54,238 nt of DNA, from positions 9,874,873-9,929,110 of the forward strand of contig NC_068996.1 of assembly GCF_001194135.2 (NCBI RefSeq). The letters are read 5' to 3'. Of this stretch, positions 936-54,238 are shown in pieces; position 1 is the stretch's first letter, and each line of letters opens with the position of its first letter. A model generated the notes under the pieces. It did not search any database, was not told the DNA's origin, and worked only from the letters and a program-made list of their open reading frames with translations. A program made the position numbers and the translations under genes. The DNA is from Octopus bimaculoides. Taxonomy: Eukaryota.

Positions 936-1547
936 CTCTATTCCATTGCATGGAACCTTGGGCAAATGTCAGACCAATGCTTTTTAAATGAAATTGGTTG
1001 ATTGGAAAGTGCACAGAAGTTTATTGTAAATATATGCATGGATGCTGGTGTCATGTAAAAAAAAACACTGGTGATGGTGCCATGTAAAAAGCACCCAGTC
1101 CACTCTAAAATGGTTGGCGTTAGGAAGGGCATCCGGCAGTAGAACCACACCGAAACAGACTATGGAGCCTAGTGTGGCTCCCAGGCTTATAGTGCCTGTC
1201 CATACCATGCCAGCATAGAAAACTGATTTTAAATTATTATTATAATGATGATGATGTGTATGCTTCAATTTTATTTTTACAAATAATATACAAGAAGACA
1301 CTTGTTCAAAGTACCACATCATGGGACTGAACCTGGGACCATGGGGTTGGGAAGCAAGCTGCTTACCACACAGCCGCACTTCTGCCTGCATGTGTGCATC
1401 TATTTTTGTAGAGAAGCAAGAATAGAACTGTGAAATGGCATGTTCAAAAATATGTCTCTGTAGTTACTTGAATTTGAAACTTATATCTTAGGTTTCGTGC
1501 ACTGATCCTTGTATAATAATAATAATAATAATAATAATCATAATAAT

Positions 1548-1975: not shown

Positions 1976-2966
1976 GTTAGTTTATTGTTCTGATCATTGA
2001 TCAGTATATCTTTATTTGAAAATTCAGCTGTAGCATGACCTTAGCTGTTATGGTTTAAACGACATAAAGAATTAGAAAAAAACCCAAAATTAAGTTAAAC
2101 ATTTCTATTAGTGCTAAAACTTGTTTTCTCATACCCTTAACTCCACACTAACATACAGAAGCATTATCTTTCTTCTATGGGTTTGTTGACCTGTGAGCTA
2201 TATAGTGACCTCAATAGTGCCAGTGGTACAAAAAAGGCACCCAGTCCACTCTCTAAAAGCGTTCGCTTTAGGAAGTGCATCCAGCTATAAAAAACATGTC
2301 AAAGCTGATCTCACCGATGCTTGTACCATGTGAAAAACATCCATTCCACTTTGTAAAATGGTTCATGTTAGAAAGGCATTCGGCTTTAAAAACCATACCG
2401 AAGCAGACAACAGAGCCTGGTGCAGTCCTCTGATTTACCAACTCCGGTCAAGCAGTCCGAACCATGCCACCATAGAAGACAGACATTAAATGATGATGAT
2501 ATATATATATATATATAACATAGAGATGTATGTGTATTCACTTTTCACGTGAAATTTAAATACTCAGTTTTCACAAATTTAAATATTCAATACAAGATAG
2601 TTTTTAATATGCTTTTATTTGTACGATTTTTTCCATTCTATGTTTATCTCATTCATTGTTTGCAATGTTCTCTCTCTCTCACACACACACACATAGACTC
2701 TCTTCAGGTTTGATTTTATTCTGAACTCACACACTCTTCATTAATTTCCGTAAAAATTCATTATTCATTTTCTTTTTGCACACCGTGTATTTTTGTATGT
2801 ACGTTTGTATAGATTCATGTACGTGAGTGAAGTGGGTGTGTTGTCATGTATACGTACAGACGTAAATACATTTGCATACATCTTTTTTGTATATATGTGT
2901 GTGTGAGAGAGAGAGTGATGTCTAAGTGGCATATGTGTGTGTGTGTGTAAACAAGAAAGTTACCAA

Positions 2967-3435
2967 TAAGACCTTCGTACATTGGGCCTCACCGAGGCGA
3001 TGACTACTGACCGAGACCTTTGGAAATGTGCTGTGCGTGAGAAGACCCGGCAAGCCAAGTAAGATCGTTGCCAGTGCCCCTGGACTGGTTCTTGTGCGGG
3101 TGGCACATGAGATGCACCATTTTGAGCGTGGCCGTTGCCAGTACCGCCTGACTGGCTCCCGTAGGATTTTCGAGCGAGATCGTTGCCAGTGCCCCTGGAC
3201 TGGCTTGTGCGGGTGGCACATAAAAGACACCATTTCGAGCGTGGCCGTTTTCGTGCGGGTGACACGTAAAAGCACCCACTACACTCTGAGTGGTTGGCAT
3301 TAGGAAGGGCATCCAGCTGTAGAAACTCTGTCAAATCAGATTGGAGCCTGGTGTTGCCATCCGGTTTCACCAGTCCTCAGTCAAATCGTCCAACCCATGC
3401 TAGCATGGAAAGCGGACGTTAAACGATGATGATGA
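2967..3435 (+). mobile_element. 5'-truncated RTE-type LINE (ORF C-terminus plus 3'UTR and (GAT)n tail); family B
   Basis: Encodes DLRTLGLTEAMTTDRDLWKCAVREKTRQAK*, homologous to the ORF end of the long copy at 30163-33139; ends ccatgctagcatggaaagcggacgttaaacgatgatgat. Confidence 0.88.
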
Positions 3436-6928: not shown

Positions 6929-7490
6929 CTCTTTACTCTTGACTTCTTTCAGTCATTTGACTGCGGCCATGCTGGAGCACCACCTTTGGTCGAGCAAATC
7001 GACCCCAAGACTTATTCTTTGGAAGCCTAATACTCGGCAGTCTCTTTTGCCGAACCACTAGGTTACGGGTACATAAACACACCAGCATCGGTTGTCAAGC
7101 GATGTTGAGGGAACAAACACAGACACACACATACATCATCATCGTTTAACGTCCGCCTTCCATGCTAGCATGGGTTGGACGATTTGACTGAGGACTGGTG
7201 AAACCGGATGGCAACACCAGGCTCCAATCTAATTTGGCAGAGTTTCTACAGCTGGATGCCCTTCCTAACGCCAACCACTCAGAGAGTATATATATATATA
7301 TATATATATATATNNNNNNNNNNTATACGACGGGCTTCTTTCAGTTTCCGTCTACCAAATCCACTCATAAGGCTTTGGTCGGCCCGAGGCTATAGTAGAA
7401 GACACTTGCCCAAGGTGCCACGCAGTGGGACTGAACCTGGAACCATGTAGTTGGTAAGCAAGCTACTTACCACACAGCCACTCCTGTGCC
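6929..7490 (-). mobile_element. tRNA-derived SINE family A with an RTE 3'-end fragment (7134-7287) nested at its (TA)n tract
   Basis: Head caggagtggctgtgtggtaag...ggttcagtccc (A/B boxes) and tail ...gactgaaagaagtcaagagtaaa on the minus strand; same family as 40981-41365. Confidence 0.85.
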
Positions 7491-7695
7491 TATTCATTTC
7501 CACCAAACCATTCTCATCTTCGTCAAGTAGAGAACAAAGGTTTGAATATTAGTTAGAAGAAACCAGTATTACTGCTGATGTATTGTAGAACTGAAGCCAT
7601 ATACCAGCAAGCTGAGTTCACAAGTCGGTTTTAGTTAGTCATAATTATAAGTTATTTCCCTTCACTTACATTTCTAAAACCATTGTGAAAAGCAT

Positions 7696-8643: not shown

Positions 8644-8950
8644 AACCCTTTAGCATTTAAACTAGCTATATCTGTCCCAAATATCCTACCTGCTTTGTGT
8701 TCAAACCAGTATTAGGAAGGGCATCCAGCTGTAGAGACCAAGCCAAAATCAGACAGAAGCTTGGTACAGCTTTCTGGCTTACCAGTTCCGGTCAAACCGT
8801 CTAACCCATGCCAGCATGGAAAACAGACGCTAAATAATCATGGTGTTGAGATGATGATGATGATTGAAATTGCAAAGCTAAAAGATGATGTATGATTAAT
8901 TTAAAACAGTGTGAATCAATAAGCGTTACATTTGACAGAGTAATCAGATT
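8644..8950. mobile_element. TTAA/CCCTTTAGCATT-ended MITE (piggyBac-like), interrupted by an RTE fragment at 8710-8860; other copies at 17779-18150 (tandem pair), 36013-36055 and 39960-40520
   Basis: Ends taaccctttagcatt and gaatgctaaacggttaa; shared internal ctctca...ctacaatgtc...aacaatcacatc sequence. Confidence 0.7.
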
Positions 8951-10064: not shown

Positions 10065-10283
10065 GCATCTGAATTACAAGATACAGTGACTGCTGCAGAA
10101 ACTTGCAATGCTGAACTGCGAAACAAAGTCGATGATTTGGAATATGATTATGAAAAAGCAGATCAGCGTGCCAGGAAGTTAGACCGACGACTAGCTGACA
10201 GTCTGCAGAAGTTGCGGGGCTACGAAGAAGACCCAGTGGTGCATGAAGGTGGCCGTACAATCTCGGGTGTTTCAAAGAATAAG
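10065..10283 (+). CDS. BRE1: BRE1 exon ASELQDTV...VSKNK
   Basis: ttttag acceptor, AAG|gtgagg donor; 73 codons of coiled-coil-like sequence. Confidence 0.93.
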
Positions 10284-10320: not shown

Positions 10321-10872
10321 GGTGCAGGCATGGCTATATGGTAAGAAGCTTGCTTCCCAGCCACATGGTGCCTTGGTCTAGTGTCTTCTACTATAGCCTC
10401 TGTTCCACCAAAGCCTTGTGAGTGGATTTGGTAGATGGAAACTGAAAGAAGCCTGTCATATATATATATGCGGGTGACACGTAAAAGCACCCACTACACT
10501 CTGAGTGGTTGGCGTTAGGAAGGGCATCCAGCTGTAGAAACTCTGCCAAATTAGATTGGAGCCTGGTGTAGCCATCCGGTTGCACCAGTCCTCAGTCAAA
10601 TCGTCCAACCCATACTAGCATGGAAAGCGGACGTTAAACGATGATGATGATGATGTGCATATATCTATGTGTCTGTGTTTGTCCCCCCACCACTGCTTGA
10701 CAACTGGCATTGGTGTGTTTACATCCCCATAACTTAACAGTTCAGCAAAAGTGGGTGATAGAATAAGTACCATACTTTGCAAAATAAGGCCTGGGGTCGA
10801 TTTGTTTGACTGAAATCCTTCAACGTGATGTTTCAGCCTGGTTGCAGTCAAATGCTGAAACAAGTAAAAAAG
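10321..10872 (+). mobile_element. SINE family A with a nested RTE 3'-end fragment (10470-10655) at its (TA)n tract
   Basis: Same head and tail as 40981-41365; the insert ends in (GAT)n. Confidence 0.85.
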
Positions 10873-11152
10873 ATAGAACATTTTAAAATTTTCTTGAGTA
10901 TCAGTTGGTATGATTCTATCTAGAAACATTGAACTACTTAGATGCAACTAGCAAGTTGCTTATAGAGCTGTTTCAGCTCAATGAATTCTTGTTTCCTATC
11001 CAAATATGTGTAGCTAAAGTACATTACCCAAAGCAATATTCCTACATATATATATATATTTTTTTACTTTACCATTGTTATTTTTCTTTTGACTTCATTA
11101 GGGTAATTAGATTTACATTTGACAGATATTTGTCCTCATTTTGTTTGTTGTT

Positions 11153-11198
11153 AACACAACGTTTCGGCTGATATACCCTCCAGCCTTCATCAGGTGTC
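11153..11198 (-). ncRNA. Minimal type I hammerhead-like motif (intact core)
   Basis: Minus strand GACAC-CTGATGA-A-GGCTG-gagggtatat-CAGCC-GAAA-CG-TT-GTGTT. Confidence 0.65.
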
Positions 11199-11484
11199 TT
11201 GGGGAAATTTCAAACATGGGTTCCCATTCTTAAGGTATTTTTCAATGTTATTATTATTATTATTATTATTATTCAGGTCACTGCCTGGAATCGAACTCGG
11301 AATCTTGGGGTTAGTAGCCCATGCTCTTAACCACTATGCCATATGCCCATGGGCATGGTGGTTAAGAGCACAGGCTACTAACCCCAAGATTCCGAGTTCG
11401 ATTCCAGGCAGTGACCTGAATAATAATAATAGCAACCTCGAAAAATACCTTAGGAATGAAAACCCAGGTTTGAAATTTCTCCAA

Positions 11485-11530
11485 GACACCTGATGAAGGC
11501 TGGAGGGTATATCAGCCGAAACACTGTGTT
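11485..11530 (+). ncRNA. Hammerhead-like motif with mutated 3' core (GAAACACT instead of GAAACGTT), probably inactive
   Basis: Plus-strand mirror of 11153-11198 with two substitutions at positions 16.2 and 16.1. Confidence 0.5.
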
Positions 11531-12370
11531 AACAACAACCAAGATGAGGACAAATATCTGTCAAATGTGAATAATGTACATTATTCCTCATCTCTTAAAT
11601 ATAGGACTGTATTAGGTTTGATTTTGTCATGGATGTTACTAACGTTTATATTACTCATTTGTGAAATATGCTCTCATTTTTTTTATTACTCATTTAACCC
11701 TTATATCATTATTTATTTTTGCAAATAATTCAGTAATGTTAACTCTAAATGTAATAAAATTCTTGTTTTTAAAGTCAACACTACGTAATACCACATACCT
11801 ACATAACGGAATACCTACTAAACATTGATATTTATGTACCAGCTCCAGGAATGCGTTTAATATGTAAATTGGTATATCCAATAACTTAACACCACTGTAT
11901 GTGCTGGCTACATAAGCAGTGTGTTTGAAGACAAGAATTGTTTAGATGGGTGCTGATGAATGGACAAAACCCCTTATATGTGACATCTCGATATGAAATG
12001 TAGCAAAAATGCTGGCTATAATTTATACAGAATATCTAGAAATAACCTTACAAAATATTATATTTAGAGTTCATAATAAATAATCACACTCACTCTAACT
12101 GGCAAAATCTTTAGTAATATTATGTGCTGAGGTCAACTTTACTTTTCATCTTTTCAGGGTCAATAAAATAAGTACCAGTTAAGTACTGGGGTTGATTTAA
12201 TTGACTTACAACCTTCTCCCTAAAATGCTGGCCTTGTGCCAACAATTTGAAGCCATTATTGATCTTAAAACTTCCCTTTCCTCAGTCATAATACCAATTC
12301 CACCAATAACTTTTAAGGCCTATTTCTTTCTTTTTTTTTTAATCCTAAATCTCTGCCACCACCCTAACAG

Positions 12371-13513: not shown

Positions 13514-13687
13514 TTACAACATTTGCCAGAGCATGTTATTATGGACAGCAGTGAGTACAAGTGTTTACAGTCCCAGTTCTCTGTACTCTATAATGAGAGT
13601 ATGCAGCTGAAGACTCAACATGAAGAGACACGTAACCTGTTGCAAACGAGTAAGATTGGACATCTACGCCATATAGAACAGATGGAG
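13514..13687 (+). CDS. BRE1: BRE1 exon LQHLPEHVIMDSSEYKCLQSQFSVLYNES...EQME
   Basis: ttttag acceptor, GAG|gtaaga donor; conserved EYKCLQSQFSVLYNES motif. Confidence 0.96.
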
Positions 13688-14842
13688 GTAAGACAAAAAA
13701 AAAAAAAACATTTCCTCTCACACCCCGTGCTAGATAGTTAAGCTCATTTTATTTACATTTTGAGTTCAAATTCCTCTGGTGTCAACTTCATGTTTTCATC
13801 CTCTTAGAGCTAATAAAATAAAGTGCCAGTCAGATTACGTCAGTTGACTACTTCTACAAAATGTGTCTTGAACATATGTTATAAATCAATGTGGCAAAAT
13901 CGTTACTGCATCAAACAAATTGCCTCGCTGGGTTCATTTTCAATCTTTATATTCTAAGCTCAAACCTCACTAAGGTAATAGGGTGGCATTTGCTGCAACA
14001 GCACATCGCAGTATCCACCATTTGTTGGTGATTTGCTACTCCTGGCAGACAATGGCTTTGCACCACAACTGCCTTCTGACACTGATGACATAAATTAATA
14101 GTCAAGTACTGGCATCAATGTAATCAAATATTCTCTCCTGTCACTTTGGTCTTTTACATTTGTAAGAAATTATTATTAGAACAGGGGAAATATCGTTTCA
14201 TATTTATTTTAGATCTGTCCATTTAAATTCTGAATTCAAATCCCGTAGGGGTCTGTGTTACTTTCATGCTTCTAGGTTTGGTGAACTATGTACCAGTAAT
14301 ATATTAGGATCAGTTACATTACCTATACCACTGCCTCCTAAATTTTTCCTATTTGTGGCAGTGTGAGGAATTTCCTATATATTATTGTTATTATTGATAT
14401 CTCTTCAGGTGGCATCCTGGTAGAATTGTTACAGCACTACGCAAAAGGCTTAGTGGGTTTTCATCTGTCTTTACATTCTGAGTTCAAATTTTGCCAAGGT
14501 CAACTGTACCATTCATCCTTTCATGGGGGTCGATAATATAAGTACCAGTCAAGCACTGGGGTCAGTGTAATCAACTAGTCCCTTACCCCAAAATTTCAGG
14601 CCTTGTGCATATAGTAGAAAGGATTACTATTGATATCAGGCAGAGTAGCATAGGTTAGCTTTTCTACCTAGTCATCTCCCACGAGCCATTCTATTCATGC
14701 CTGCATGGAAGATGGACGTTAGACGATGATGATGATCTCTTGATGGAGAATTGCTACTGATCTCCATGTGAATGTGGGTATATTACTGGCATTTGAATAA
14801 ATCCTTCCTAATGCCCTCTCTATCAATACCTTTTTACTTTAG

Positions 14843-16754: not shown

Positions 16755-17096
16755 TCATTTAACATCTGCTTTCCATGCTAGCATGGGTTGGACGATTTGA
16801 CTGAGGACTGGTGAAACCAGATGGCAACACCAGACTCCAATCTGATTTGGCAGAGTTTCTACAGCTGGATGCCCTTCCTAACGCCAACCACTCTGAGAGT
16901 GTAGTGGGTGCTTTTACGTGCCACCGGCACGAAGGCCAGTCACAGGGTACTGGCAACAGCCACGCTCAAAATGGTGTTTTTTACGTGCCACCTGCATGGG
17001 AGCCAGTCCAGCGGCACTGGCAATGACCTCGCTCGAATGATTTTCTAACGTGCCACCAGCACAAGTGCTAGAAGGCGATGCTGGTAATGATTATGC
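16755..17096 (-). mobile_element. RTE family B 3'UTR fragment running into an N gap; other B copies near 1040-1255, 2205-2500, 15130-15395, 19705-19960, 23945-24395, 25615-25760, 26295-26500, 49105-49660, 49815-50150, 52630-52790
   Basis: Shared ctacagctggatgcccttcctaacgccaacc and tttccatgctagcatggg motifs; (CAT)n tails on the plus strand. Confidence 0.85.
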
Positions 17097-19029
17097 NNNN
17101 NNNNNNNNNNNNNNNNNNNNNNNNNNNNNNNNNNNNNNNNNNNNNNNNNNNNNNNNNNNNNNNNNNNNNNNNNNNNNNNNNNNNNNNNNNNNNNNNNNNN
17201 NNNNNNNNNNNNNNNNNNNNNNNNNNNNNNNNNNNNNNNNNNNNNNNNNNNNNNNNNNNNNNNNNNNNNNNNNNNNNNNNNNNNNNNNNNNNNNNNNNNN
17301 NNNNNNNNNNNNNNNNNNNNNNNNNNNNNNNNNNNNNNNNNNNNNNNNNNNNNNNNNNNNNNNNNNNNNNNNNNNNNNNNNNNNNNNNNNNNNNNNNNNN
17401 NNNNNNNNNNNNNNNNNNNNNNNNNNNNNNNNNNNNNNNNNNNNNNNNNNNNNNNNNNNNNNNNNNNNNNNNNNNNNNNNNNNNNNNNNNNNNNNNNNNN
17501 NNNNNNNNNNNNNNNNNNNNNNNNNNNNNNNNNNNNNNNNNNNNNNNNNNNNNNNNNNNNNNNNNNNNNNNNNNNNNNNNNNNNNNNNNNNNNNNNNNNN
17601 NNNNNNNNNNNNNNNNNNNNNNNNNNNNNNNNNNNNNNNNNNNNNNNNNNNNNNNNNNNNNNNNNNNNNNNNNNNNNNNNNNNNNNNNNNNNNNNNNNNN
17701 NNNNNNNNNNNNNNNNNNNNNNNNNNNNNNNNNNNNNNNNNNNNNNNNNNNNNNNNNNNNNNNNNNNNNNNNNNNNNNAAACCAACCAGATCTGGCCTCT
17801 CATATCTACCCTACAATGTCATCCTAAAAATAAGCAATCACATCATCAAAGATAAGAGATAAGAGACATTGCCTGATAAATTCAAAACAATATGAATAAA
17901 TAAGCATTACATTTGACAGAGTGATTTGATTGCAAGTAAGTTTAATCCAATCATATCTGGCCCAAATATTCTTCCTGCTTTGTTTAAACCAACCAGATCT
18001 GGCCTCTCATATCTACCCTACAATGTCATCCTAAAAATAAACAATCACATCATCAAACCGTCAAAGCTAAGAGATAATGCGTAATTTATTCAAAACAAAG
18101 TGAATCAATAGCATTACATTTTATGGTGTAATCTGAATGCTAAACGGTTAAGGATATCCTTAATAAAAGAAGCAGAGAAATGGAGAGTATATATATGATT
18201 TCTTACAGTTAAAGATATCCTTTCCTTAATTGCTAAAGATTGTATATGTGCTCTCTGATCACATGGTGTTTCTTTCTCTCACACTCCCTTACTCTTTCTC
18301 TTATTCCGTTACTTTATATGTGTATCGCCCTCTCTGTCACCTCATAATTATGTCTCTCTCAGTGGCTCCTTCTGTGACAGTTCACACTCTGAGCATCCTA
18401 TACAACACCGTAAAGAGATGCGGCAAAGGTAATCAATTAGGAGGTTGGAATCACTGGCAGCCACCTATAAGATAGCACAGTGGCTCCCAATAAAACTCTG
18501 CAGGCCACAGTAAAGGCTGCCTATCTAGGACAGTAGTTACTGAATAATATATATGAAGTAGGCATTTCCTCCAAACAACAGCAAAAAGGCAACCTGCCTA
18601 AGAGGACAGCAACTTTGAATAAAAGTTGATACTGTGGAAAGAGGATATGTCAGTCCTGTCCAAAAAACTCTCTTTAGGCTAACACAAAATTTTATTCTTT
18701 AAAATCATATCCATTACAAGATTAAGATATAGTTTTAAGCATTATTAAATAAACAGAAATAATTAATGCTTAATTGTCAGTGTATTTTTTACATTAAATT
18801 AAGTGATATCTGTATATAAATCATTCTTTTCCTCATTCCATTTATTGGACTGTGGTGATGTTGGGGTATCACTTTTAAGTATATTTAATTGATCATATCA
18901 ACCCTGGTACTTATTTTATCAATCTCTGTTACTGACAGGCTAAGTTACCTTTTGATGTAAAGGGATGCATTGTCTCATTCATTCACCATGATTTTATGTC
19001 CATGCCTATCTGACACATGCAGACAAAGT

Positions 19030-19320: not shown

Positions 19321-21692
19321 TTTCCCTCTTGACTCTTTGCCGAGTATACCCGTCATCATCTAGTCACTCAACAAGCTATCTTATACTATTCCCTGTTCCC
19401 TACTTTCTTTCAGACATCCCAATAATATTTCTATCTACAGCACCATTCCACTACCAAGTTATCTTCTGTAACATAAGTGGAATAGTGCTGAAGCCTGATG
19501 TAACTTGAAGCAGGTTCTCTCAAAGAAACTCCCAGCTGTGTTGTATGTTACACATCTCTCTCTTGCCTTCTTCAACATACATATGATCAAATACTTCCCT
19601 CTTTAGATTGTCCTGTGTACCTGGCTCTGCCTAGTTCCTACTCTGAAGTCACTAATCACTAATCCATGTTATGTAGTATAATATTCACACCCTTCACACC
19701 ACCCCAGGCTCCAATTTGATTTGGCAGAGTTTCTACAGCTGGATGCCCTTCCTAATGCCAACCACTCTGAGAGTGTAGTGGGTGCTTTTACATGCTACCA
19801 GCACAAAGGCCAGTCAGGAGGGACTGGCGACGGCCACGCTCAAAATGGTGTATTTTACATGCCTCCTGCACAGGAGCCAGTCCAGCGGTACTGGCAACAA
19901 ACTCACTCGAATGTCTTTTCACGTGCCAGGAAGGCGTTGTTGGTAACGATCGGAAGGCGACATCGATTCTAGTGCTCAGGTGGCACTTATTTTATCAAAC
20001 TCGAAAGAATGAAAGGCAAAGTTGACCACAGCAGAATTTGAACTCAAAACATAGAGTCAGAAGAAATACTGCTGAGCATTTTGTCTGGCACGGCAACAAT
20101 TCTACCAGTTTGATGCCTTTGATAGAATACCTTATACCTGAATACTTAAATGCAATATTGCTTCTAAACTTTTCTTAAATGGATTTTTTATTTTTATGGC
20201 TTGATCAATGCAGTCCATAATTGCACTGTGGTGATTAAAATATGTTTAAACTGACATCATTTAAAAAGGTTTTCTTTGCATTAATGATATATGGTTTGAA
20301 TCCCAAGTGATTAAATAAACTGAAATAGTTAAAGTTTAATCATCACTCTTTAAAAAAACTAATACCACAATATAGATAAGGTTTTGTCTCATCATCAGTC
20401 AGTCATCTTATAATATGCCTGGAATGTATTGGAGTTACACAGGTTATACCCTGTTTAGCATTCAACATGTGGTTGTTTGTCCAAAGTTATCTAGAGTCAA
20501 TAGCAGTCAGCAGAATGTAAGGAGATATGTAGGACAGCAGGTTGTTATTATGTCTATTCTATACATGTATATCTACGTCTATGTAGATATACATAATATG
20601 TCTAGCATATTTGTTACCACAACAAAAAAATATGCTACGTAGACATGCTTTTTATAAACTAGGATTTATTATCATTGAATTGTGTCCCCTCTTCCCAAGA
20701 ATTTTTACTGCACCATTAATTTAAAATGTCAGCCCCTTAATTTTGATCTGATTAATTTGCTGAAACAAATGGCATCTCTCACTTACTATAATTTCTTAAT
20801 ATTCCAACAGAATTTACCTACCCCGCCCCCCTCTCTCTGTCATATGTATGGGTACCAGTTCATGAAGGCTTTACTGTGACCTATAGGATGTCTAAAAATT
20901 AGTCAATTAATTTAATTTTTAAATAGTATGATAATTACTACTATGTCGGCAAGCAGTGATGAAGAAGGCTTATACTTTAGCTGATGAAGCCTAATAAGCC
21001 CAAACATTCAGTCTTGTCTCCTTTGCTTGCTCAGCCTATATGTAGGTTTTTTTTTTTTTTTAATAATGTACAAATATAGGTACAGGTGTGGTTGTGTAGT
21101 AAGAAGCTTGCTTCCCAATCACATGGGTCTCGGTTCAGTTCTACTGCATGGTATCTTGAGCAAGTGTCTTCTACTGTAGTCTTGAGTCAACCAAAGCCTT
21201 GTGAGTAGATTTGGTGGACAGAAACTGAAAGAAGCCCATCATATATATATTTGTGTGTGTGTGTTTGTATATGTATATTTTTATTAATATTTAGCAGAAG
21301 TAACAGTAACTTAAGGTCCGGGAGTTTCGTGTATTGGCACTTATCAAACTTATAAAATTATACACATATTCATATTTTGACTTCTATTTTTCCTGTTTGC
21401 ATCACCATACCTATGTATATATCTGTGCCCTAAAAAAATGGTCAAAATAGAATATCTTTGATCAAGACTGACTTGGGACTGAACAACTCCCAAAGCTTTA
21501 CGTAAGTGCTAACAATGAAAGACCAAAAAAACAAAAAACAAAAAAAAATAAAGAAATTGAAAAAAATGAATGACAGATTGATCTAATATATGATATGTAA
21601 TAGGTATGTTCTCTCCCATTATCAGTGACACATTTAAAATGGAACAACTCTTAACAGGCATATCTTTTTTTGTATCGTGTATTTTTCTGCAG

Positions 21693-23778: not shown

Positions 23779-23889
23779 ATCATGTGTATATATGTATGTA
23801 TATATATACACACATGATATGTGTTTATGTTGTGTATTTATATAATCATCATCATGGAAACAGGAGATAGATATTAATATTAATTTCAA

Positions 23890-23928
<39 letters not shown>

Positions 23929-24773
23929 ATACATCGAAATTGAACCAAATTTGATGACTGGCACATGTGCCAGTGGAGCGCTAATAGTACCAACCGAGCA
24001 GGATCACTGCCAGAGCAGCAGTCTCGCTTCCGTGCCGGTTGCACGTAAAAAGCACCATTTGAGCGCAATCGTTTCCAGCTTCGCCTTACTGGCACTTGTG
24101 CCGGTGGCATGTGAACAAAACATTGGACTGACTCCTGTTCAAGTGGCATGTAAAAAACACCATTTGAGCGTGGCCATTGCCAGTACCAGCGGACTGGCCC
24201 TCGTGCTGGTGGCACATAAAAAGCACCCACTGCACTCTCAGTGTGGTTGGCATTAGGAAGGGCATCCAGCTGTAGAAACTCTGCCAAATCAGATTGGACC
24301 CTGGTGTAGCCATCTGGTTTCACCAGTCTTCAGTCAAATCGTCCAACCCATGCTAGCATGAAAAGCGGACGTTAAACGATGATGATGATGATCATCATCA
24401 TTTAATGTCTGCCTTCCATGCTGTCATGTGCTGGATGGTTTGACAGGAGCTGGTCAGCTAAAGGATTGTGCCCAGGTCTACTGCCTGCCTCAACAAGTTC
24501 CACCTGACCCATGCAAGCATGGAAAAGTGGATGTTAGATGATAATGAGTGTGTGTGTGTATGTATGTATATCATTATTTTACTGTCTGTTTTTCCATGCT
24601 TGCATGGGAAGGATGGAGTTTATTGAAGCAAATTTTCTATGGCCCGATGCTCTTCCTGTTGCCAACCATCACCTGTTTCCAGGTAAGGTACTTGGAAAGT
24701 GAATATATAATTAAATTTTACATAAACATAATTGAACATCAGAAAATTACTATTTTTAAATCTCACAACGAGA

Positions 24774-30082: not shown

Positions 30083-30162
30083 GTAAGTTCTCGAGTCAAC
30101 CTTGATCAGCCAGGCCAATGGCTTTCCTGTCTTTGTATGGTGATTGTGTGCATATGTGTGTA

Positions 30163-33139
30163 TCATCATCAATTAACATCCATTTTCCATGCTGGCATGG
30201 GTTGGACGGTTTGACTGAGGTCTGGAGAGCCAGCTGCTGCACCAGGCTCCAATCTGGTCTGGCAGGTTTCTACAGCTGGATGCCCTTCCTAACGCCAATC
30301 ACTCCGAGAGTGTAATGGGTGCTTTTACGTGCCACCGGCACAGGAGCCAGTAAGGCTGGCCTGGCCATGAACACATTCAGATGGTGCTTTTTACATGCCA
30401 CCAGCACAGGAGCCAGGCAAGGGGTACTGGTATTGGTCACAATCGGTTGGTGCTTTTTACATGCCACTGGCACAGGAGCCAGTCAGGCAGACCTAGCATT
30501 GACCATGTTCAGATGATGCTTTTTACGTGCCATTGGCACGGGAGCCAGTCAGGGGCACCAGCTCCAGCAACGATACTGGTTTTACTTGACTCAACAGGTC
30601 TCCTCAAGCATATCATATCGCTCAATGCATCAAGAGTATTCTTAACAGGGCTGGACGTGCATGGCTGCGATCTCACTTCGCTTGCTGGGTCTTCTCAATC
30701 ACAGTGTAACTCCAAAAGTCCTGGTCTCCTGTCATTGCCTCTGTGAGGCTCAATGTTTGAGGTTCCTTCTACAGTTAGGGAGTGGCACTTCCTTACACAG
30801 CTATCCTCATCCATACGTAACACATGGCCATACCAGCGCAATCGCCTCACTTGCACACCACATTTGATGCTTCTTATATCCAACTTTTCTCTCAGGGTGC
30901 TTACACTGTCGTGTGTGCACTCTGACATTACACATCCAGTGGATCATACTAGCTTCATTTCTTTCAAGCCTACGCATGTCCTCAGCATTCACGGCCCATG
31001 TTTCACTGCCGTGTAGCATGGCAGTTTGTACACACGCATCATACAGTCTACCTTTCACCCTGAGCAAGAGGCCCTTAGTTGCCAGCAGAGGTAGGAGCTC
31101 CCTGAACTTTGCCCAGGTTATTCTTACTCTAGTCGTTACACTCGCAGAGCATCCACCCCTACTACAGACTTGGATGCTTAGGTAGCAGAAACTATTAACT
31201 ACTTCTAGTTTCTTCCCCTGGCATGTGATGCAATCTTTTTTCTGTACATCTTCAGTGTTTATTGCCCCAGTGCATCTGCCACACACAAAAACTAGCTTCC
31301 TGGTTAATCTTCTTTTGATATTGCTGCACCTTTTATGTGTCCACAGCTTACACCAGGTACATCATATGGAGTTTCTACCCACGTCTTTTCTACAAATTGA
31401 ACAGGGCCATCTACCTGAAGTGGGTTGTGATTTGACAGCCTTCCTACTTACCAAGACTTTGGTTTTGGCTAGGTTAACCCTAAGGCCCTTCAATTCTAGA
31501 CCTTCCTTCCACACCCTAAACTTCAACTCCAGTTCTGGCAGTGACTCGGCTATTAGAACAAGGTCGTCAGCATAGAGGAGCTCCTAGGGGCAGCCTCTCT
31601 TGAATTCCTCTGTTATTGCCTGGAAGACTATAATAAATAAGAGGAGGCTGAGGACTGATCCTTGGTGAACCCCTACATTTACTTGGAATTCTTCATTATA
31701 CTTGTTGCTGACCCTCACCTTACTGTCAGTATCCCTGTACAAAGTTTGTACAGCTCTTACCAGCCACTCATCTATCCCCAGTTTCTGCATTGGCCACCAG
31801 ATAAGAGATTGAGGGACCTTGTCAAAGGCTTTCTCCAAGTTAACAAAAGCCATGTACAAAGGTTTATCTTTGGCTAGGTATTTCTCCTGCAGCTGCCTTA
31901 CCAGAAATATAGCATCAGTGGTGCTTCTGCCTGGCACAAAGCCAAACTGCATCTCATCTAGGCTAACTCTCTCCCTAATTAGTTGGGCTATGATCCTCTC
32001 TGTAACTTTCATCACCTGATCCAATAATTTGGTACCCCTGTAGTTATTTCTATCTAAAGCATAACCTTTCCCCTTGTTGCAGTTGACTATGGTGCTGTTA
32101 CACCAGTCATTGAGTATGTCTCCTTCATGAACTACCTGTGGGTGACAAGACCATAACCCACACCGCCCACTATTTTAANNNNNNNNNNNNNNNNNNNNNN
32201 NNNNNNNNNNNNNNNNNNNNNNNNNNNNNNNNNNNNNNNNNNNNNNNNNNNNNNNNNNNNNNNNNNNNNNNNNNNNNNNNNNNNNNNNNNNNNNNNNNNN
32301 NNNNNNNNNNNNNNNNNNNNNNNNNNNNNNNNNNNNNNNNNNNNNNNNNNNNNNNNNNNNNNNNNNNNNNNNNNNNNNNNNNNNNNNNNNNNNNNNNNNN
32401 NNNNNNNNNNNNNNNNNNNNNNNNNNNNNNNNNNNNNNNNNNNNNNNNNNNNNNNNNNNNNNNNNNNNNNNNNNNNNNNNNNACGCAAGGGCAGCATCAT
32501 CCATGCAGACACATTTCTCTCCTATGACATCATGGTTTTCTCTCACACTCTGTCTTACAATCCGAGATACTTCAGTTCTTTGGTCGTCCTCATGTCACTG
32601 AACATTGGCAAACTTCTTTTCTGCTACTCCCTTGGCTATATATACCTGTCTCTTAGCTTCCCTTTTGACTATCTGATGCATTCTCCTGCTACCCCACTCT
32701 TCCAAGCATTCCAGGCCTATTTCTTTGCTCTAATGGCCCTGTCTACAGTATTGTTCCACCACCATGTTACTCTGGGTTTGGGAGGGACTTTGCACCAGCC
32801 ACAGATGTGGTCTGTGACACTCAGCAAGTTGTCTCACAGGAATTCCCAGCTGCCTTCTATGTCACAGCACTGTCGCTCTTCCTCCTTATCATCAAATTTC
32901 TCGGTAAAGATACCCCTAAATCTCTGACCATGTGAAGGGTGCCTAAGCTTCCAAGTCCTTCTTTTCCAGATTGGTCTGGTTTTAGGCATCCTTCTGGCCT
33001 TGAGTCTAAAGTCACTAATGACTAGTCTATGCTGGGGGTTACATTCTTCACCAGGGAGGGTCTTTGTATTTAAGAGCAACCATGCATCCTGCTGTCTGGT
33101 GAAAATGAAATCGATCAGGCTAGTGGAGTCACCTGATGT
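30163..33139 (-). mobile_element. 5'-truncated, inactivated RTE-clade LINE (end of AP endonuclease, reverse transcriptase, 3'UTR) in the last BRE1 intron
   Basis: IDFIF...HRLVISDF (APE end); QFGFVPGRSTTDAIF, GVHQGSVLS and GCP*ELLYADDL (RT with premature TAG); RLRWYGHV; frameshifts; N gap 32179-32482; family B tail. Confidence 0.95.
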
Positions 33140-33574
33140 ATATATATGTATATATATCCACATTAATATCAAACAATGAGAATGGGACATTCATCTCCAT
33201 GTTGTAGATGAACATCCCATGTGACAAACTTGAATAATAATTGAGAGATATCTCTCTCAACATGAAACAAAACCAATGGTAGTCTAGTTAAACCATGAAT
33301 AAAGAAAAAAATACTATCAATCTATCTATCTATATATATATATACATAGATAGATAGATAGATATGTGCCCTAATTCTTCGAAGCGCTTAGTTTAGAATA
33401 GGGGCAGCTGATGAAGGAAATATTCTCTATGTGGCCTGTTTGTTTTCTGTGCTCTGTTTATGTTCTGTTTTTCATTTTGTCCACGTTTTTTGTGATGTCC
33501 TATACCCAGATATGCATCTATATATACATGTAGATGTAGGTATGTACATACATGTACGTATATATGCATATACT

Positions 33575-39755: not shown

Positions 39756-40144
39756 TACCACAAGCATGGTATCTTAGCCAATGCACTTTCAGCAGAATAC
39801 TTGAATGTAATAAAGTCATAAATTATTAAATCCTCATCATCATTTAATGTCCAGTCTCCATGCTGGCATTGGTCAGACTGACCGGATTTGACATGCTGAA
39901 TGCCTAAGATTTATATCTCTTAAAATATTGTATTTAACTAACTTCACATGGATTAATCTTTTGGTGTTTATGTTAGCCATATCAGGCCAAAATATTCTGC
40001 TTTATTATCAAATTGCTAGATGTGGCCTCTCACACGTATCCTATTTTAAAAATAAACAATCAGATTGAAATCTCAAAGCTACAAGACATTGTCAGATTAA
40101 TTCAAAACAATATGAATAAATAAGAATTGCATTTGACAGAGTAA

Positions 40145-40487
40145 AGTAAAAAGACCCCCTTTTGTCATGTATGACCATGGGACTGCACCTAGAAAGTTAC
40201 CCTCCCAGGCACAAGTCTTGGCAAGCTTGTATATAGAAGACAAGCAGTCGCCCATGCATTCCAGCCTCCCCTCTCCACACCACCAATGTTATCCAAGAGA
40301 AAGGCAAAGGGGCTGATACAGCTTGGCACCAGTGACGTTGCAACTCATTTCTACAGCTGAGTGAACTGGAACAACATGAAATAAAGTGTCTTGCTCAAGA
40401 ACACAACACACAGCCCGGTCCAGGAATCGAACTCACTACCTCATGATTGTGATCCCAACACTCTAACCACTGAGCCATGTGCCTTCA
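40145..40487 (-). mobile_element. SINE family D (tail type 2) inserted in a TTAA MITE
   Basis: Same head and core as 8304-8627; imperfect 15-bp flanking duplication catttgacagagtaa/catttgtttgagtaa. Confidence 0.8.
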
Positions 40488-40739
40488 CATTTGTTTGAGT
40501 AATCAGAATGCTATCGAGTTAAAGACCTAGCTATTGTCTTTATCATTAAAACTCAACTCTACCACACACCATAGTGATGATGTTGCTGTGTGGTCATTTG
40601 AATTGCTAGAAATAGCAATCAAAACTTCTTCATAGCTACTTGAATTATCAAAGGAGTAATTTATCCAGTGTGTACTTGAAATTTTTAAGATATCACAATG
40701 TGATTTGTACTTTTGCTATTTCTATTGAGTCATCCACAA

Positions 40740-42155
40740 AGTTTTGAGTGTTTTTGGAGGATGGAAACAAAATTTTATTTCCAATGCAATAATTTCTGTT
40801 CATCAAAATACCCTCCGGTTCCCTTGAATTTAATCCATCTTTTCAACAGCTTCAGATTTCTATCCACATAGAATTGCTCTGTCTTGGAAGAAAAGAATGT
40901 ACCCAGGTGGTTTTTGAGTGAATCTAAACCATTTAATAGTTTCCTGTTCCTAGAATTTTTGAGAAATCTTAACAAATAGACGCAGGAGTGGCTGTGTGAT
41001 AAGTAGCTTGCTTACCAACCACATGGTTCCGGGTTCAGTCCCACTGCGTGGCACCTTGGGCAAGTGTCTTCTACTATCGCCTCAGACCGACCAAAGCCTT
41101 GTGAGTGGATTTGGTAGACGGAAACTGAAAGAAGCCCATCGTATATATATATATATGTTTGTGTGTCTGTGTTTGTCTCCCCAACATCGCTTGACAACTG
41201 ATGTTGGTGTGTTTATGTCCCTGTAACTTAGAGGTTCGGCAAAAGAGACCGATAGAATAAGAACTAGGCTTACAAAGAATAAGTCCTGGGGTCGATTTGC
41301 TCGACTAAAAAAGGTTGTGCTCCAGCATGGCCGCAGTCAAATGACTGAAACAAGTAAAGAGTAAATGAAAGTCAGGTAGTGCAATGTTAGGAGAGTTTCA
41401 TACATGTGGTGAGAGACACCAGCCAAACTCATGCAACTTTGTGTGGGTAACGAAAAGCACATGCAGTCTTCATTAAACATAACCCATTTCCAGTTGACTA
41501 CTTCTGGCCTCATCTGGTGAATTTTTGTTTTTTGATTCATTTTCTCCAGATGATGCTTGTATATGTCACAATTGATTTTCTAAGCTGGAGTATAATAATG
41601 TCTTTGAAATCCCACCAGAGACAAAGCGTAACCTTTTTTTTGCATGAATATTTTGCTTTGGTAACTGTTTAGCCACAGAAACCTCAGAACCATTTCCACA
41701 CTATCCTTGACTATCCATTTTAGATCTCCGCTCACCAATTACTTTAAAAGAGGTTCACATACATTGTGTTTTAAGAGCATGTCACAGATGAAATATTGCT
41801 CTGTGCAGTTTTTCTCTGACAGGTTGTAAAGAACCCATTCATTATAGAAGGAAATGTGCCAAGTTTCACTAGGTGTTAACGAATGGTACATTTTGGTACT
41901 TCCATATATCTCTGCAAGCTCCCAAGTCGTGATTTTGGGGTTGATCAGTGTATACCTTCAGATCTTTGTCCAGCTTTGAAGGTCTCCTAAAGAAACTCGA
42001 AATCTTCAATGTCTGAATTTTGTAAACCATTTCTGACCCATTGATTCACCTATAGCACCTTCACCATACACATCAAGAATGGTTTTACGTTTCTGTAGCA
42101 TTTTCATCCTTTTTAGAGATGAAATTTATTACGTGCTGCAATTGTTGATTATCCA
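40740..42155 (-). mobile_element. Near full-length degenerate mariner transposase, interrupted by a SINE A at 40981-41365
   Basis: N-terminal VYGEGAIGE...KWFTKF...TTWELAE, middle RPEVVNWKWVMFNED, C-terminal LKNHLGTFFSSKTEQFY...LLKRW...GGYF; many stops and frameshifts. Confidence 0.82.
40981..41365 (+). mobile_element. Full-length tRNA-derived SINE family A; inverted full copy at 42164-42593; partial copies near 1290-1390, 6500-6640, 21079-21260, 46760-46960, 47680-47820, 49090-49790
   Basis: A box tggctgtgtga and B box ggttcagtccc; central (TA/TG)n; tail ...gcagtcaaatgactgaaacaagtaaaga. Confidence 0.9.
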
Positions 42156-42430: not shown

Positions 42431-43794
42431 CAATGGGCTTCTTTCAGTTTCCGTCTACCAAATCCACTCACAAGGCTTTGGTCAGCCCAAGGCTATAGTA
42501 GAAGACACTTGCCCAAGGTGCCATGCAGTGGGAATGAACCCGGAACCATGTGGTTGGTAAGCAAGCTACTTACCACATAGCTACTCCTGCGCCTTAATAA
42601 AGGTTGATTAAAAGTAAGAGATTTACCGATTTTTTATGCAAGATGCAACAAGTAAGATATCATGCTATAAGTGATTTCAACATAAGTGTTGTACCAATAT
42701 TACAGCTGTAATACGGACCATTTGAAGACACAACTCAAAATTGCTTGGAGCTTTCCAAGTGACCCATTAGCTGGTTAAATGGCCAATATAAAGTCTCCCT
42801 AAATTGAGAAGTTCTTGGTGAAATGAGACTAAAGGGATCTCTGAACTCTATTTTTCTTCTGTTCCCTCACTAAATACTCTAGAGAGTTGAGGTGAGGATT
42901 GGGGTGTTTTTGTCATGGCATCAGCATGAGGAGGGGTCATTTTATTCACTCTCACTCAAGATAATGTGACAAAAAATACAAATTATTAACAATCAAAGAC
43001 AATCATCAAATTTCAAAAGATTCTTAAAGATTCATATTAGAAGAAATAATTCAGACAACAAACTTGTGAAATGTGTGACAATCAAACGGAATAACCAAAA
43101 GATTCAAGAATGGGAAGAAATTGAAGGTTAATGCAAACATGAACTGCAAAACAAAAAAATTCACGTAGTAAAGATTGTTTGCCAACATAACATGGCAGTC
43201 CTGGTTTAGGACTAATGTTGCTGTAATTTAGCCCCATGCAACATAGTCTCCAGCTGGCTATACGACACGATCTGTGTCCTTATATTTTCAGACAAGGAAA
43301 TCTAGCACCCCCACTCAGCTCAAAACAATATCTGTGTATTGCGATTTCCGAGTTATTTCCCTCCATCAGCAATCTTTACTACAAAGTACTGTTGCTGAAT
43401 ATCTCACGTGAGGTTTAAAAATAGTAATTTTCCAAAACAATTCTCATTTACTGCACCATTTGCCCACAATACTAAACAGGATAAAAATTAATACACTGGG
43501 TAAGAGGACATAAATGACAAATCAAAGATTTATCTCTTAGAAATAGTGAACTACTAAACATTTGTGCAAATGGAAAATTCAAAATGTTTCTTTTTTTTCT
43601 CAAAATAAAGGAAGAAAATTATCAACTACAAAAGTCAACAGAATACTTTATAAGGATTCTAAATCTGAAACTGAACCAGAAATAGTCAACACCACTATTA
43701 AAAACATCTACATCTAAACAGATTACACCATAACGTGTTTGAAAAACTTATATATTACAAAAATATCTTCCCAAAAGATATGTGTCACTCTACT

Positions 43795-51604: not shown

Positions 51605-51840
51605 TGGAGGCGCGTGGCTTAGTGGTTAGGGTGTCAGCATCATGATTGTAAGATTGTGGGTTCGATTCCTGGACCGGGTGACGCGTTGTGTTCTTGAGCA
51701 AAACACTTCATTTCACGTTGCTCCAGTCCACTCAGCTGGCAAAAATGAGTAACGCTGCGATGGAACACAGCTGGGGAACACATACGTCATTGAAACCGGG
51801 CCCATGAGCTTGGCTAGGCTTTAAAAGGGCACATTTATTT
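51605..51840 (+). mobile_element. SINE family D (tail type 3); isolated tail fragment inverted at about 23122-23176
   Basis: Head ggaggcgcgtggcttagtggttaggg...ggttcgattcc plus the shared core; tail ...gggcccatgagcttggctaggctttaaaagggcacatt. Confidence 0.82.
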
Positions 51841-51934
51841 ATAATTTTATTAAAATAACACCATAAATCTCAGTCTTTGTTTTAATGTATTTAAAAGTAA
51901 TAACTCCCTCAAAAGAAAATCTTCTAACGCATAC

Positions 51935-53026: not shown

Positions 53027-53084
53027 TATAATATATATGTATGTGTGTGTGTGTAATATATATATATATATATATATAATGTAT

Positions 53085-54033: not shown

Positions 54034-54036
54034 CAT

Positions 54037-54238
54037 AATACAGTTCTATATTTAAGAGATGAGGAATTATTTACATTATTTACATTATCTACATTTGACG
54101 GATATTCGTCCTCATCTTGTTTGTTGTTAACACAACGTTTCGGCTGATATACCCTCCAGCCTTCGTCAGGTGTCTTGGGGAAATTTCGAACCTGGGTTCT
54201 CATTCCTATCGATGTCACTATTATTATTATTATTATTA
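54037..54238 (-). mobile_element. Third copy of the hammerhead-tailed element, cut by the window end at its (AAT)n tract; hammerhead motif at 54129-54174
   Basis: Minus strand GACAC-CTGACGA-A-GGCTG-gagggtatat-CAGCC-GAAA-CG-TT-GTGTT; flanks match 11111-11250 and 11430-11612. Confidence 0.85.

What the first reader, a model, noticed from the sequence alone, without database searches (positions are those of the whole stretch)
11111..11612. tRNA-headed, hammerhead-tailed SINE-like element arranged as a ~460-bp head-to-head palindrome inside a BRE1 intron
Seen in sequence: two ~230-bp arms centred on atgcccatgggcat. Each arm reads outward as a Pol III-type head (A box TGGCATAGTGG intact in the left arm, B box GAGTTCGATTCC, loop GGG-CTACTAA-CCC), an (AAT)n tract, a spacer, then GACAC-CTGATGA-A-GGCTG-10nt-CAGCC-GAAA-CG-TT-GTGTT and an ~80-nt tail. 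Established knowledge: minimal type I hammerheads with a palindromic, nearly absent helix III occur in Penelope-like elements and non-LTR retrozymes and cleave as dimers. An extra A after A9 is tolerated (CChMVd). Schistosoma SM-alpha is a tRNA-derived SINE carrying a hammerhead. Penelope insertions often show inverted terminal arrangements. Inference: this may be a Penelope-mobilised, self-processing SINE/retrozyme family with a tRNA-Ser(GCU)-like head (resemblance recalled, not aligned). I am not aware of one described in cephalopods.
Basis: partly seen in the sequence, partly recalled or inferred. Interest (0 to 1): 0.85.

Follow-up and report, generated by a model that had tools for sequence, protein, structure and literature searches.

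The report
Inverted octopus SINE pair with hammerheads
An intron of an octopus BRE1 gene holds two old, head-to-head copies of a short mobile element that joins a tRNA-like promoter to the minimal hammerhead ribozyme typical of Penelope-like retrotransposons; the combination is neat and apparently undescribed, but it is built from known parts.

Summary
Two inverted copies (11111-11351 minus, 11352-11614 plus) share about 92% identity. A third partial copy lies at 54036-54238 (minus).

Each unit reads: tRNA-like head with A and B boxes, (AAT)n, spacer, 46-nt hammerhead, tail with a 9-bp stem.

The hammerhead is a Penelope-like-element (PLE) minimal type. It has a 5-bp helix I, an extra nucleotide between A9 and G10.1, a G10.1-C11.1 pair, a 6-bp helix II, a palindromic ACGU in place of helix III, and a GUU cleavage site. 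My descriptor matched none of 300 simulated windows. The right-arm copy is broken (CGUU to CACU).

The locus looks like a PLE-type insertion: an inverted copy abuts the 5' end, and a 43-nt extension sits at one end only. The three copies are equally diverged, so the palindrome dates from the family's amplification.

Not supported: the tRNA-Ser identity, the retrozyme label (no tandem repeats), and any family-wide claim. No further octopus DNA could be reached. Head-to-module linkage is seen at one locus only, and Rfam calls no hammerhead.

Closest known are the schistosome Sm-alpha/Sj-alpha elements and dispersed PLE min-HHRs. Verdict: partly supported, new member of a known kind, moderate interest.

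The parts
11111..11351 (-). Left copy of the element. It reads right to left, has the full 5' end, and lacks the last ~43 nt of the tail.
11272..11351 (-). tRNA-like head of the left copy: A box 11331-11341, anticodon-like loop 11308-11320, B box 11287-11298.
   Evidence: Rfam tRNA 14.8 bits at 11284-11341. Motif positions. Weak similarity to other SINE heads in the window.
11248..11271 (-). (AAT)8 linker of the left copy.
11153..11198 (-). Intact minimal type I hammerhead motif: GACAC/CUGAUGA/A/GGCUGG-8nt-UCAGCC/GAAA/CG/UU/GUGUU. Predicted cleavage is after U at 11158.
   Evidence: Descriptor hit, with 0 of 300 simulated windows matching. The fold gives helices I and II.
11352..11614 (+). Right copy of the element. 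It is 5'-truncated by ~9-11 nt and has the full tail.
11352..11418 (+). tRNA-like head of the right copy: A box degenerate (GGCATGGTGG at 11352-11361), B box at 11394-11405.
11419..11430 (+). (AAT)4 linker of the right copy.
11485..11530 (+). Hammerhead motif of the right copy, disabled at helix III and the cleavage site (GAAACACU instead of GAAACGUU).
11531..11614 (+). 3' tail with a 9-bp stem (AGAUGAGGA 11542-11550 / UCCUCAUCU 11585-11593). Bases 11573-11614 form the extension that is missing from the left copy.
   Evidence: (I8)
54036..54238 (-). Third, solitary copy of the 3' module, cut by the window end inside its (AAT)n. Intact hammerhead at 54129-54174 with U7 changed to C. Its 3' end abuts (TA)n.

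Best explanation
This is a fossil insertion of a short non-autonomous retroelement of octopus. The element is a composite with three parts:
- A tRNA-derived head that carries an internal RNA polymerase III promoter (A and B boxes).
- An (AAT)n linker, probably the old tail of a simple SINE.
[quoted passage not shown] It holds a minimal type I hammerhead and a 3' stem-loop.

Proposed mechanism (all inferred):
1. Pol III transcribes the unit.
2. A PLE reverse transcriptase/GIY-YIG endonuclease recognises the 3' module in trans and integrates it by target-primed reverse transcription at AT-rich or microsatellite sites.
3. As is usual for PLE integration, a second copy was laid down in inverted orientation against the 5' end, and a ~40-nt extension was left at one end only. 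That produced the head-to-head palindrome.

The hammerhead has no helix III of its own (palindromic ACGU). It could therefore cleave, after GUU, only when two copies pair.

Shown here: the anatomy, the fit to the hammerhead descriptor, the insertion architecture, and the age. Both copies have since decayed by about 4-5% each, and the right-arm ribozyme is broken. At this locus the element most likely does nothing, apart from giving BRE1 pre-mRNA a ~230-bp imperfect hairpin.
For: Anatomy is shared by three copies.

Hammerhead:
- My descriptor hits the left arm and copy 3, and none of 300 simulated windows.
- All four extra hallmarks of PLE min-HHRs are present: a nucleotide between A9 and G10.1, the G10.1-C11.1 pair, palindromic 15.2-16.2, and a short helix I with a long helix II.
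- The only core change in an intact copy is at the free position N7.
- The hammerhead has fewer variable columns than the rest of the module: 3 of 46 against 17 of 86, Fisher p=0.046.

Head:
- A box and B box lie at tRNA spacing.
- The Rfam tRNA match is 14.8 bits. The reported E=6.9 is multiplied over 4227 families, so it is about 0.002 for tRNA alone.

Insertion architecture:
- The inverted copy sits at the 5' end, the 43-nt tail is at one end only, and copy 3 abuts (TA)n. All three are described as PLE peculiarities.
- The three copies are mutually ~90% identical with equal singleton counts, so the palindrome is as old as the family's amplification.
- The (AAT)n lies only on the 5' side of the module in all three copies, so it is internal to the element and not a target site.

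Background: octopus genomes carry many Penelope families.
Against: - The head is seen joined to the module only in the two arms of one locus, which are not independent. Copy 3 is cut before any head.
- No PLE coding sequence, and no pLTR to compare with, is in the window.
- TSDs could not be defined; the 9-mer with one mismatch is at chance level.
- Rfam finds no hammerhead. This is weak evidence, because a canonical-looking bacterial type I motif was also missed.
- The hammerhead fold is not more stable than shuffles (z=-1.4).
- There is no covariation, no cleavage data and no transcription data.
- The 3' stem-loop would suit a LINE partner just as well.
Confidence: 0.55

Rival explanations
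1. It is an ordinary LINE-mobilised tRNA SINE. A LINE reverse transcriptase recognises the 3' stem-loop. The hammerhead-like stretch is a passenger relic picked up from a PLE fragment, or a chance match. The palindrome arose by template switching or by a later DNA-level inverted duplication.
For: The conserved 9-bp stem in the tail is the kind of structure that stringent LINE/SINE pairs use. LINE reverse transcriptase fragments are present in the window. SINEs and LINEs are the most abundant octopus repeats.
Against: The tail has no similarity to the LINE sequences in the window. Twin priming inverts one part of a copy and does not duplicate the whole unit. An inverted copy plus a one-sided extension is a PLE signature. 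The motif fits PLE min-HHR hallmarks that were not part of any search.
Confidence: 0.2
2. It is a chance composite. A small tRNA SINE ending in (AAT)n lay next to an independently inserted solo pseudo-LTR or truncated PLE. The whole stretch was later duplicated in inverted orientation at the DNA level. On this reading no 'tRNA-headed hammerhead SINE' family exists.
For: Head-to-module linkage is seen in one locus only. PLEs favour microsatellite targets. Most dispersed min-HHRs are thought to be truncated PLEs. Two protein-level searches spanning head plus spacer found nothing.
Against: (AAT)n is found only 5' of the module in all three copies, including the unlinked copy 3, and never 3' of it. 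The arms are no closer to each other than to copy 3, so the duplication dates to the amplification burst and not later. The protein database holds almost no octopus repeat ORFs, so the null searches carry little weight (one search found one hit).
Confidence: 0.15
3. It is an assembly artefact: a fold-back chimera that created a false palindrome.
For: The window comes from a gapped short-read-style scaffold with 12 N runs. PLE structures are known to confuse such assemblies.
Against: The arms differ by 17 substitutions, by (AAT)n length, by 11 nt at the 5' end and by 43 nt at the 3' end. A fold-back artefact would be a perfect repeat. No N gap is adjacent.
Confidence: 0.03

Closest known systems
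Minimal hammerheads (min-HHR) of Penelope-like elements (Cervera & de la Pena 2014, PMC4209133; Lunse et al. 2017)
   Same: Type I topology. Helix I of 5 bp and helix II of 6 bp. An unpaired nucleotide between A9 and G10.1. A G10.1-C11.1 pair. Helix III reduced to palindromic 15.2-16.2, so activity is expected only as a dimer. Dispersed copies occur, including pairs on opposite strands a few hundred bp apart.
   Different: Here the motif lies in a ~270-bp unit behind a tRNA-like head, not in the pseudo-LTR of an element with an RT/EN ORF. No PLE pseudo-LTR was available for comparison.
Sm-alpha / Sj-alpha SINE-like retroposons of Schistosoma (Ferbeyre et al. 1998; Laha et al. 2000; summarised in PMC6765202)
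   Same: A short non-autonomous element with a Pol III-type promoter followed by a hammerhead.
   Different: As I recall it (their sequences could not be read here), the schistosome elements carry canonical hammerheads with tertiary loop contacts and a short helix III. They are often in tandem arrays and cleave in vitro. Here the ribozyme is the PLE minimal type, no tandem array is seen, and the taxon is a cephalopod. Sequence homology was not tested.
Metazoan non-LTR retrozymes (Cervera & de la Pena 2020, PMC7229834; Li et al. 2026 bioRxiv)
   Same: Small, AT-rich, non-coding elements with type I hammerheads, thought to depend on PLEs.
   Different: Retrozymes are head-to-tail tandem repeats expressed as circular RNAs, and no Pol III or tRNA head is reported for them. 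This locus is an inverted pair plus one solitary copy.
Octopus tRNA-derived SINEs OK, OR1, OR2 (Ohshima & Okada 1994)
   Same: tRNA-derived SINEs of octopus. OR1-like, CORE-type copies appear to be abundant in this same window.
   Different: The head here is only ~57% similar on average to the other SINE heads in the window, and its body is different. The published consensus sequences could not be consulted.

Membership tests
Hammerhead ribozyme, type I | Conserved core CUGANGA ... GAAA, plus a UH cleavage site in the correct order | tested here: met
   The left arm 11153-11198 and copy 3 54129-54174 fit. The right arm fails at 16.2/16.1.
Hammerhead ribozyme, type I | Helices I and II formed by Watson-Crick or GU pairs around the core | tested here: met
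   Helix I is 5 bp and helix II is 6 bp. Both appear in the minimum-free-energy fold.
Hammerhead ribozyme, type I | Match to the Rfam hammerhead covariance models | tested here: not met
   No hit at E<=10, even on a 61-nt slice. A canonical-looking bacterial type I motif also escaped the models, so the negative is weak.
Hammerhead ribozyme, type I | Self-cleavage | not testable with these tools
   Needs in vitro transcription of monomer and dimer constructs.
PLE-type minimal hammerhead | Unpaired nucleotide between A9 and G10.1 | tested here: met
   An A is present in all three copies. The feature is listed.
PLE-type minimal hammerhead | G10.1-C11.1 pair, palindromic 15.2-16.2, no helix III loop | tested here: met
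   GGCUGG/UCAGCC and ACGU. The features are listed.
PLE-type minimal hammerhead | Location in the pseudo-LTR of a PLE, or homology to one | not testable with these tools
   No PLE ORF or pseudo-LTR is in the window, and no octopus repeat library was available.
PLE-type minimal hammerhead | Consensus families with compensatory changes | tested here: inconclusive
   Only three copies. There are 3 variable columns in 46 and none is compensatory.
tRNA-derived SINE (SINE2) | Internal Pol III A and B boxes at tRNA spacing | tested here: met
   TGGCATAGTGG and GAGTTCGATTCC lie 43 nt apart start to start in the left copy. The A box is degenerate in the right copy.
tRNA-derived SINE (SINE2) | Recognisable tRNA homology | tested here: inconclusive
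   Rfam tRNA gives 14.8 bits against a gathering score of 29. ARAGORN finds none. The acceptor stem is not paired.
tRNA-derived SINE (SINE2) | Many dispersed copies with common 5' ends and TSDs | tested here: inconclusive
   Three copies in 54 kb plus one O. bimaculoides ORF. There is no clear TSD. The head is seen at one locus only.
tRNA-derived SINE (SINE2) | 3' tail shared with an autonomous partner | not testable with these tools
   No match to the LINE fragments in the window. No PLE was available for comparison.
Non-LTR retrozyme | Head-to-tail tandem repeats of 170-400 bp, each with a hammerhead | tested here: not met
   The arrangement is inverted. No direct tandem copies were found.
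Non-LTR retrozyme | Expression as circular RNA | not testable with these tools
   No RNA data were available.
PLE-type insertion architecture | Inverted copy abutting the 5' end, and a 30-40-bp extension at one end only | tested here: met
   The copies are head to head, and the 43-nt extension 11573-11614 is on the right only.
tRNA-Ser(GCU) origin of the head | Long variable arm and GCU anticodon | tested here: not met
   In the Rfam alignment the anticodon position reads ACU and the variable region is ~5 nt.

The most novel reading that the evidence does not exclude
This may be the first recognised SINE proper that parasitises Penelope-like elements rather than LINEs. On this reading, a Pol III-driven tRNA head is fused to a PLE pseudo-LTR module, carries the PLE's dimer-dependent minimal hammerhead, and inserts with the PLE's inverted-copy signature. 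Such a family would give a ~270-nt system for asking what PLE reverse transcriptase recognises and what the enigmatic min-HHR does.
Probability: 0.35. Interest if true: 0.65.

Novelty: new member of a known kind. Interest (0 to 1): 0.45.

Why it matters
Thousands of minimal hammerheads are scattered through animal genomes, and their role is still called unknown. Most are dismissed as truncated PLEs.

A compact element that pairs such a ribozyme with its own Pol III promoter, and that shows PLE-style insertion scars, would suggest that part of this 'dark' population is an independent class of PLE-dependent SINEs. It would extend the LINE-SINE partnership model to the third retrotransposon order. 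It would also offer a small substrate for testing PLE template recognition and dimer-only cleavage.

For octopus genomics, it would help to classify part of the large 'unclassified SINE' fraction.

At this particular locus the practical consequence is modest. It is an old intronic insertion whose inverted arms can fold BRE1 pre-mRNA into a long imperfect duplex.

Tried and rejected
- Rfam at gathering and at E<=10, on the window, on the region and on a 61-nt slice. No hammerhead was found. The miRNA hits (mir-7147 at 28 bits, mir-455 at 27 bits, far below their thresholds) only reflect the hairpin and were rejected.
- ARAGORN found no tRNA.
- Three protein-level searches with translated frames of the element, meant to harvest other copies. 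They gave one O. bimaculoides ORF and two nulls.
- Five exact-protein look-ups, meant to obtain DNA beyond the window end or other loci. All were empty.
- Two metagenome scans and one viral-contig scan with hammerhead patterns. They returned nothing related, only an unrelated GC-rich bacterial hammerhead, L001.
- Literal sequence strings searched in the literature. No hits.
- TSD search. Only chance-level matches.
- Fold stability. z-scores of -1.4 (hammerhead), and -1.6 and -0.6 (tails), so not informative.
- An apparent compensatory change in a 4-bp tail hairpin (GACA/UGUC against GACG/CGUC). I discounted it because both changes are CpG transitions, and almost any CpG decay there keeps pairing.
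- Twin priming was rejected because the whole unit is duplicated, not partitioned.
- Lunse 2017 and Ferbeyre 1998 could not be read.

Full report
**Observation**

The repeat finder reports two collinear inverted-repeat blocks: 11111-11264/11419-11572 (154 nt, 91%) and 11261-11340/11352-11431 (80 nt, 96%). They are separated only by a length difference in an (AAT)n tract. BLAST of one arm against the other gives E=4.5e-70. A global alignment has 17 substitutions in 223 aligned positions, 14 of them transitions and several at former CpGs. No assembly gap is nearby.

Every quoted motif is present:
- A box TGGCATAGTGG at 11331-11341 (minus strand).
- B box GAGTTCGATTCC at 11287-11298 (minus) and 11394-11405 (plus).
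- The GGG-CTACTAA-CCC loop.
- The (AAT)n tracts.
- The hammerhead-like string.

**Anatomy of the unit**

A third copy of the 3' part lies on the minus strand at 54036-54238. The window end cuts it inside its (AAT)n. With three copies the unit can be delimited as:
- A head of about 78 nt.
- (AAT)4-8.
- A spacer of about 50 nt.
- A 46-nt hammerhead motif.
- A tail of about 85 nt ending ...CTGTATTA, which contains a 9-bp stem, AGAUGAGGA/UCCUCAUCU.

The two arms are not equivalent. The left (minus-strand) copy has 11 more nucleotides at its 5' end (CATGGGCATAT). That brings it to the length expected for a full tRNA-like 5' end when compared with other SINE heads in the window. It stops at 11111, without the last ~43 nt. 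The right copy is 5'-truncated by about 9-11 nt and carries the full tail (11573-11614).

**The hammerhead**

Written as RNA, the left arm and copy 3 read GACAC CUGA(U/C)GA A GGCUGG AGGGUAUA UCAGCC GAAA CG UU GUGUU. This breaks down as:
- Helix I of 5 bp.
- The CUGANGA box.
- One unpaired A.
- Helix II of 6 bp opening with G10.1-C11.1.
- The GAAA box.
- A15.1-C-G-U16.1, with no loop.
- U17 as the cleavage nucleotide.
- The 3' strand of helix I.

I wrote a descriptor for such minimal type I motifs. It found exactly these two sites in the window and none in 300 simulated windows of the same first-order composition. Minimum-free-energy folding recovers helices I and II, although the fold is not more stable than shuffles (z=-1.4).

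Cervera & de la Pena (2014) list four features of Penelope-like-element (PLE) minimal hammerheads that were not in their search descriptor and argue against chance:
- A conserved G10.1-C11.1 pair.
- Palindromic 15.2-16.2.
- A short helix I with a long helix II.

All four are met here. The 'extra A' is therefore diagnostic, not an anomaly.

Among the three copies, the only change inside an intact motif is U7 to C, at the one free core position. The right arm carries two changes (G16.2 to A, U16.1 to C) that destroy the palindrome and the A15.1-U16.1 pair, so that copy is presumably dead. Variable columns number 3 of 46 in the motif against 17 of 86 elsewhere in the module (Fisher p=0.046). That is suggestive only.

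Rfam reports no hammerhead at E<=10, even for a 61-nt slice. As a control, a canonical-looking type I hammerhead with a full helix III, found by pattern search in a metagenome contig (L001), was not called Hammerhead_1 either. The Rfam negative therefore carries little weight.

**The head**

ARAGORN finds no tRNA. The Rfam tRNA model aligns positions 8-63 to 11284-11341 (minus) at 14.8 bits, below the gathering score of 29. The printed E=6.9 is multiplied over 4227 families, so for the single prior hypothesis 'tRNA' it is about 0.002.

The A and B boxes are 43 nt apart start to start, as in a tRNA. The D arm, anticodon arm and T loop are recognisable, but the acceptor stem is not paired. The anticodon position reads ACU and the variable region is short, so the recalled tRNA-Ser(GCU) origin is not supported.

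Other SINE heads in the window resemble this head only weakly (nhmmer E 0.01-0.4; alignment). They do not reach the tRNA model at all. The sense strand of all three copies has no T4 run. That is compatible with Pol III read-through, but it is not significant in so short a sequence.

**Origin of the palindrome**

In the shared module the three copies are mutually about 90% identical (right-left 90.1%, right-copy 3 90.1%, left-copy 3 90.9%). Singleton counts are nearly equal (8, 6, 6). The arms are thus no closer to each other than to an unlinked copy 43 kb away. The inverted pair dates from the time the family was amplifying, not from a recent duplication.

A fold-back assembly artefact is excluded by the many differences between the arms. 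Twin priming is excluded because the whole unit is duplicated, not partitioned.

The architecture matches what is described as typical of PLE insertions (Craig et al. 2021; Goubert et al. 2022):
- 'A 30- to 40-bp extension (tail) ... present only at one end'.
- A preference for (TA)n and other microsatellites.

Copy 3 abuts (TA)n at its 3' end. Cervera & de la Pena had already noted pairs of min-HHRs on opposite strands 100-700 bp apart in Schistosoma.

**Context**

The plus strand of the window carries a BRE1 (RNF20/RNF40) homologue:
- The joined C-terminal exons match human BRE1B residues 854-1000 at E=1e-56.
- The exons at about 10086-10230 and 13523-13690 match BRE1B at about 266-310 and 380-431.

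The palindrome is therefore intronic. The right copy is in sense with the gene.

A translated frame of the module is 83% identical to an O. bimaculoides 'uncharacterized protein' (A0A0L8FV75). That identifies the host as an octopus and shows at least one more copy elsewhere in that genome.

**Limits**

I could not reach more octopus DNA. Protein-level searches across the head-spacer junction found nothing. Exact-protein look-ups were empty. Collection scans gave nothing related.

As a result, the link between head and module rests on one locus whose two arms are not independent. The consistent 5'-only position of (AAT)n in all three copies gives some further support. Copy number, consensus, covariation, TSDs, the partner element and activity all remain untested.

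**Comparison with what is known**

It works like the PLE minimal hammerheads, and probably is one. It resembles the schistosome Sm-alpha/Sj-alpha SINE-like elements in joining a Pol III promoter to a hammerhead.

It is not a non-LTR retrozyme by their defining tandem arrangement.

In the searchable literature I found no cephalopod hammerhead-bearing SINE and no SINE assigned to a Penelope partner. The giant squid genome paper merely counts 235 Rfam Hammerhead_1 hits. Repbase, Dfam and SINEBase could not be queried, so the repeat family itself may already be catalogued.

**Verdict**

- The best explanation, at confidence 0.55, is a decayed PLE-style inverted insertion of a composite tRNA-headed element carrying a PLE-type minimal hammerhead.
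- It is a new member of a known kind, of moderate interest (0.45).
- The more novel reading is a true Pol III SINE family that depends on Penelope-like elements. I give it about 0.35.

Noticed in passing
window 2960-3370(-), 7198-7395(+), 10391-10585(-), 16811-17026(+), 19721-19972(+), 23886-24323(-), 30118-30315(+), 49139-49483(+): A highly repeated element gives near-identical spurious ORFs (MKPDGNTRLQSDLAEFLQLDALPNANHSE...). There are at least eight copies in 54 kb, one of them only ~500 bp upstream of the palindrome. It is probably part of an abundant octopus SINE.
   Followed up: no
window 42509-42590(-), 40984-41063(+), 7411-7499(-), 1306-1387(-): tRNA-like SINE heads (GGCGCAGGAGTGGCTGTGTGGTAAGTAGCTTGCTTACCAACC...CCTTGGGCAAGTGTCTTCTACT) that look like a CORE-type, OR1-like octopus SINE. 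They are only weakly similar to the head of the palindrome element.
   Followed up: partly
window 51605-51870(+), 40250-40490(-): A second tRNA-headed SINE family with the body ...GTTGTGTTCTTGAGCAAGACACTTTATTTCACGTTGCTCCAGTCCACTCAGCTG....
   Followed up: no
window 8862-8943(-), 17825-17922(-), 18032-18121(-), 39950-40140(-): A ~100-bp repeat starting ACTCTGTCAAATGTAAYGCTTATTTATTCATATTGTTTTGAATT shares a 13-14-nt string (CTGTCAAATGTAA) with the tail of the hammerhead element. The left arm is truncated about two bases after this string ends. This may be coincidence or a shared tail motif.
   Followed up: partly
window 30695-33190(-), 52905-53249(+): LINE reverse transcriptase fragments (Pfam RVT_1, E=1.9e-16 for 31584-32024). 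The first lies inside a BRE1 intron and is interrupted by an N gap. The second is about 800 bp from copy 3 of the element.
   Followed up: partly
L001 2404-2470 (metagenome contig Ga0187803_10020600): A GC-rich, probably bacterial contig carries a canonical-looking type I hammerhead. It has the same helix II sequence (GGCUGG/UCAGCC), an unpaired U after A9 and a full helix III. Rfam does not call it Hammerhead_1.
   Followed up: partly
window 11530-11615(+), 54040-54125(-): Inside the tail stem there is a 4-bp hairpin, GACA/UGUC in both arms and GACG/CGUC in copy 3. It is a double change that keeps pairing, but both changes are CpG transitions.
   Followed up: yes
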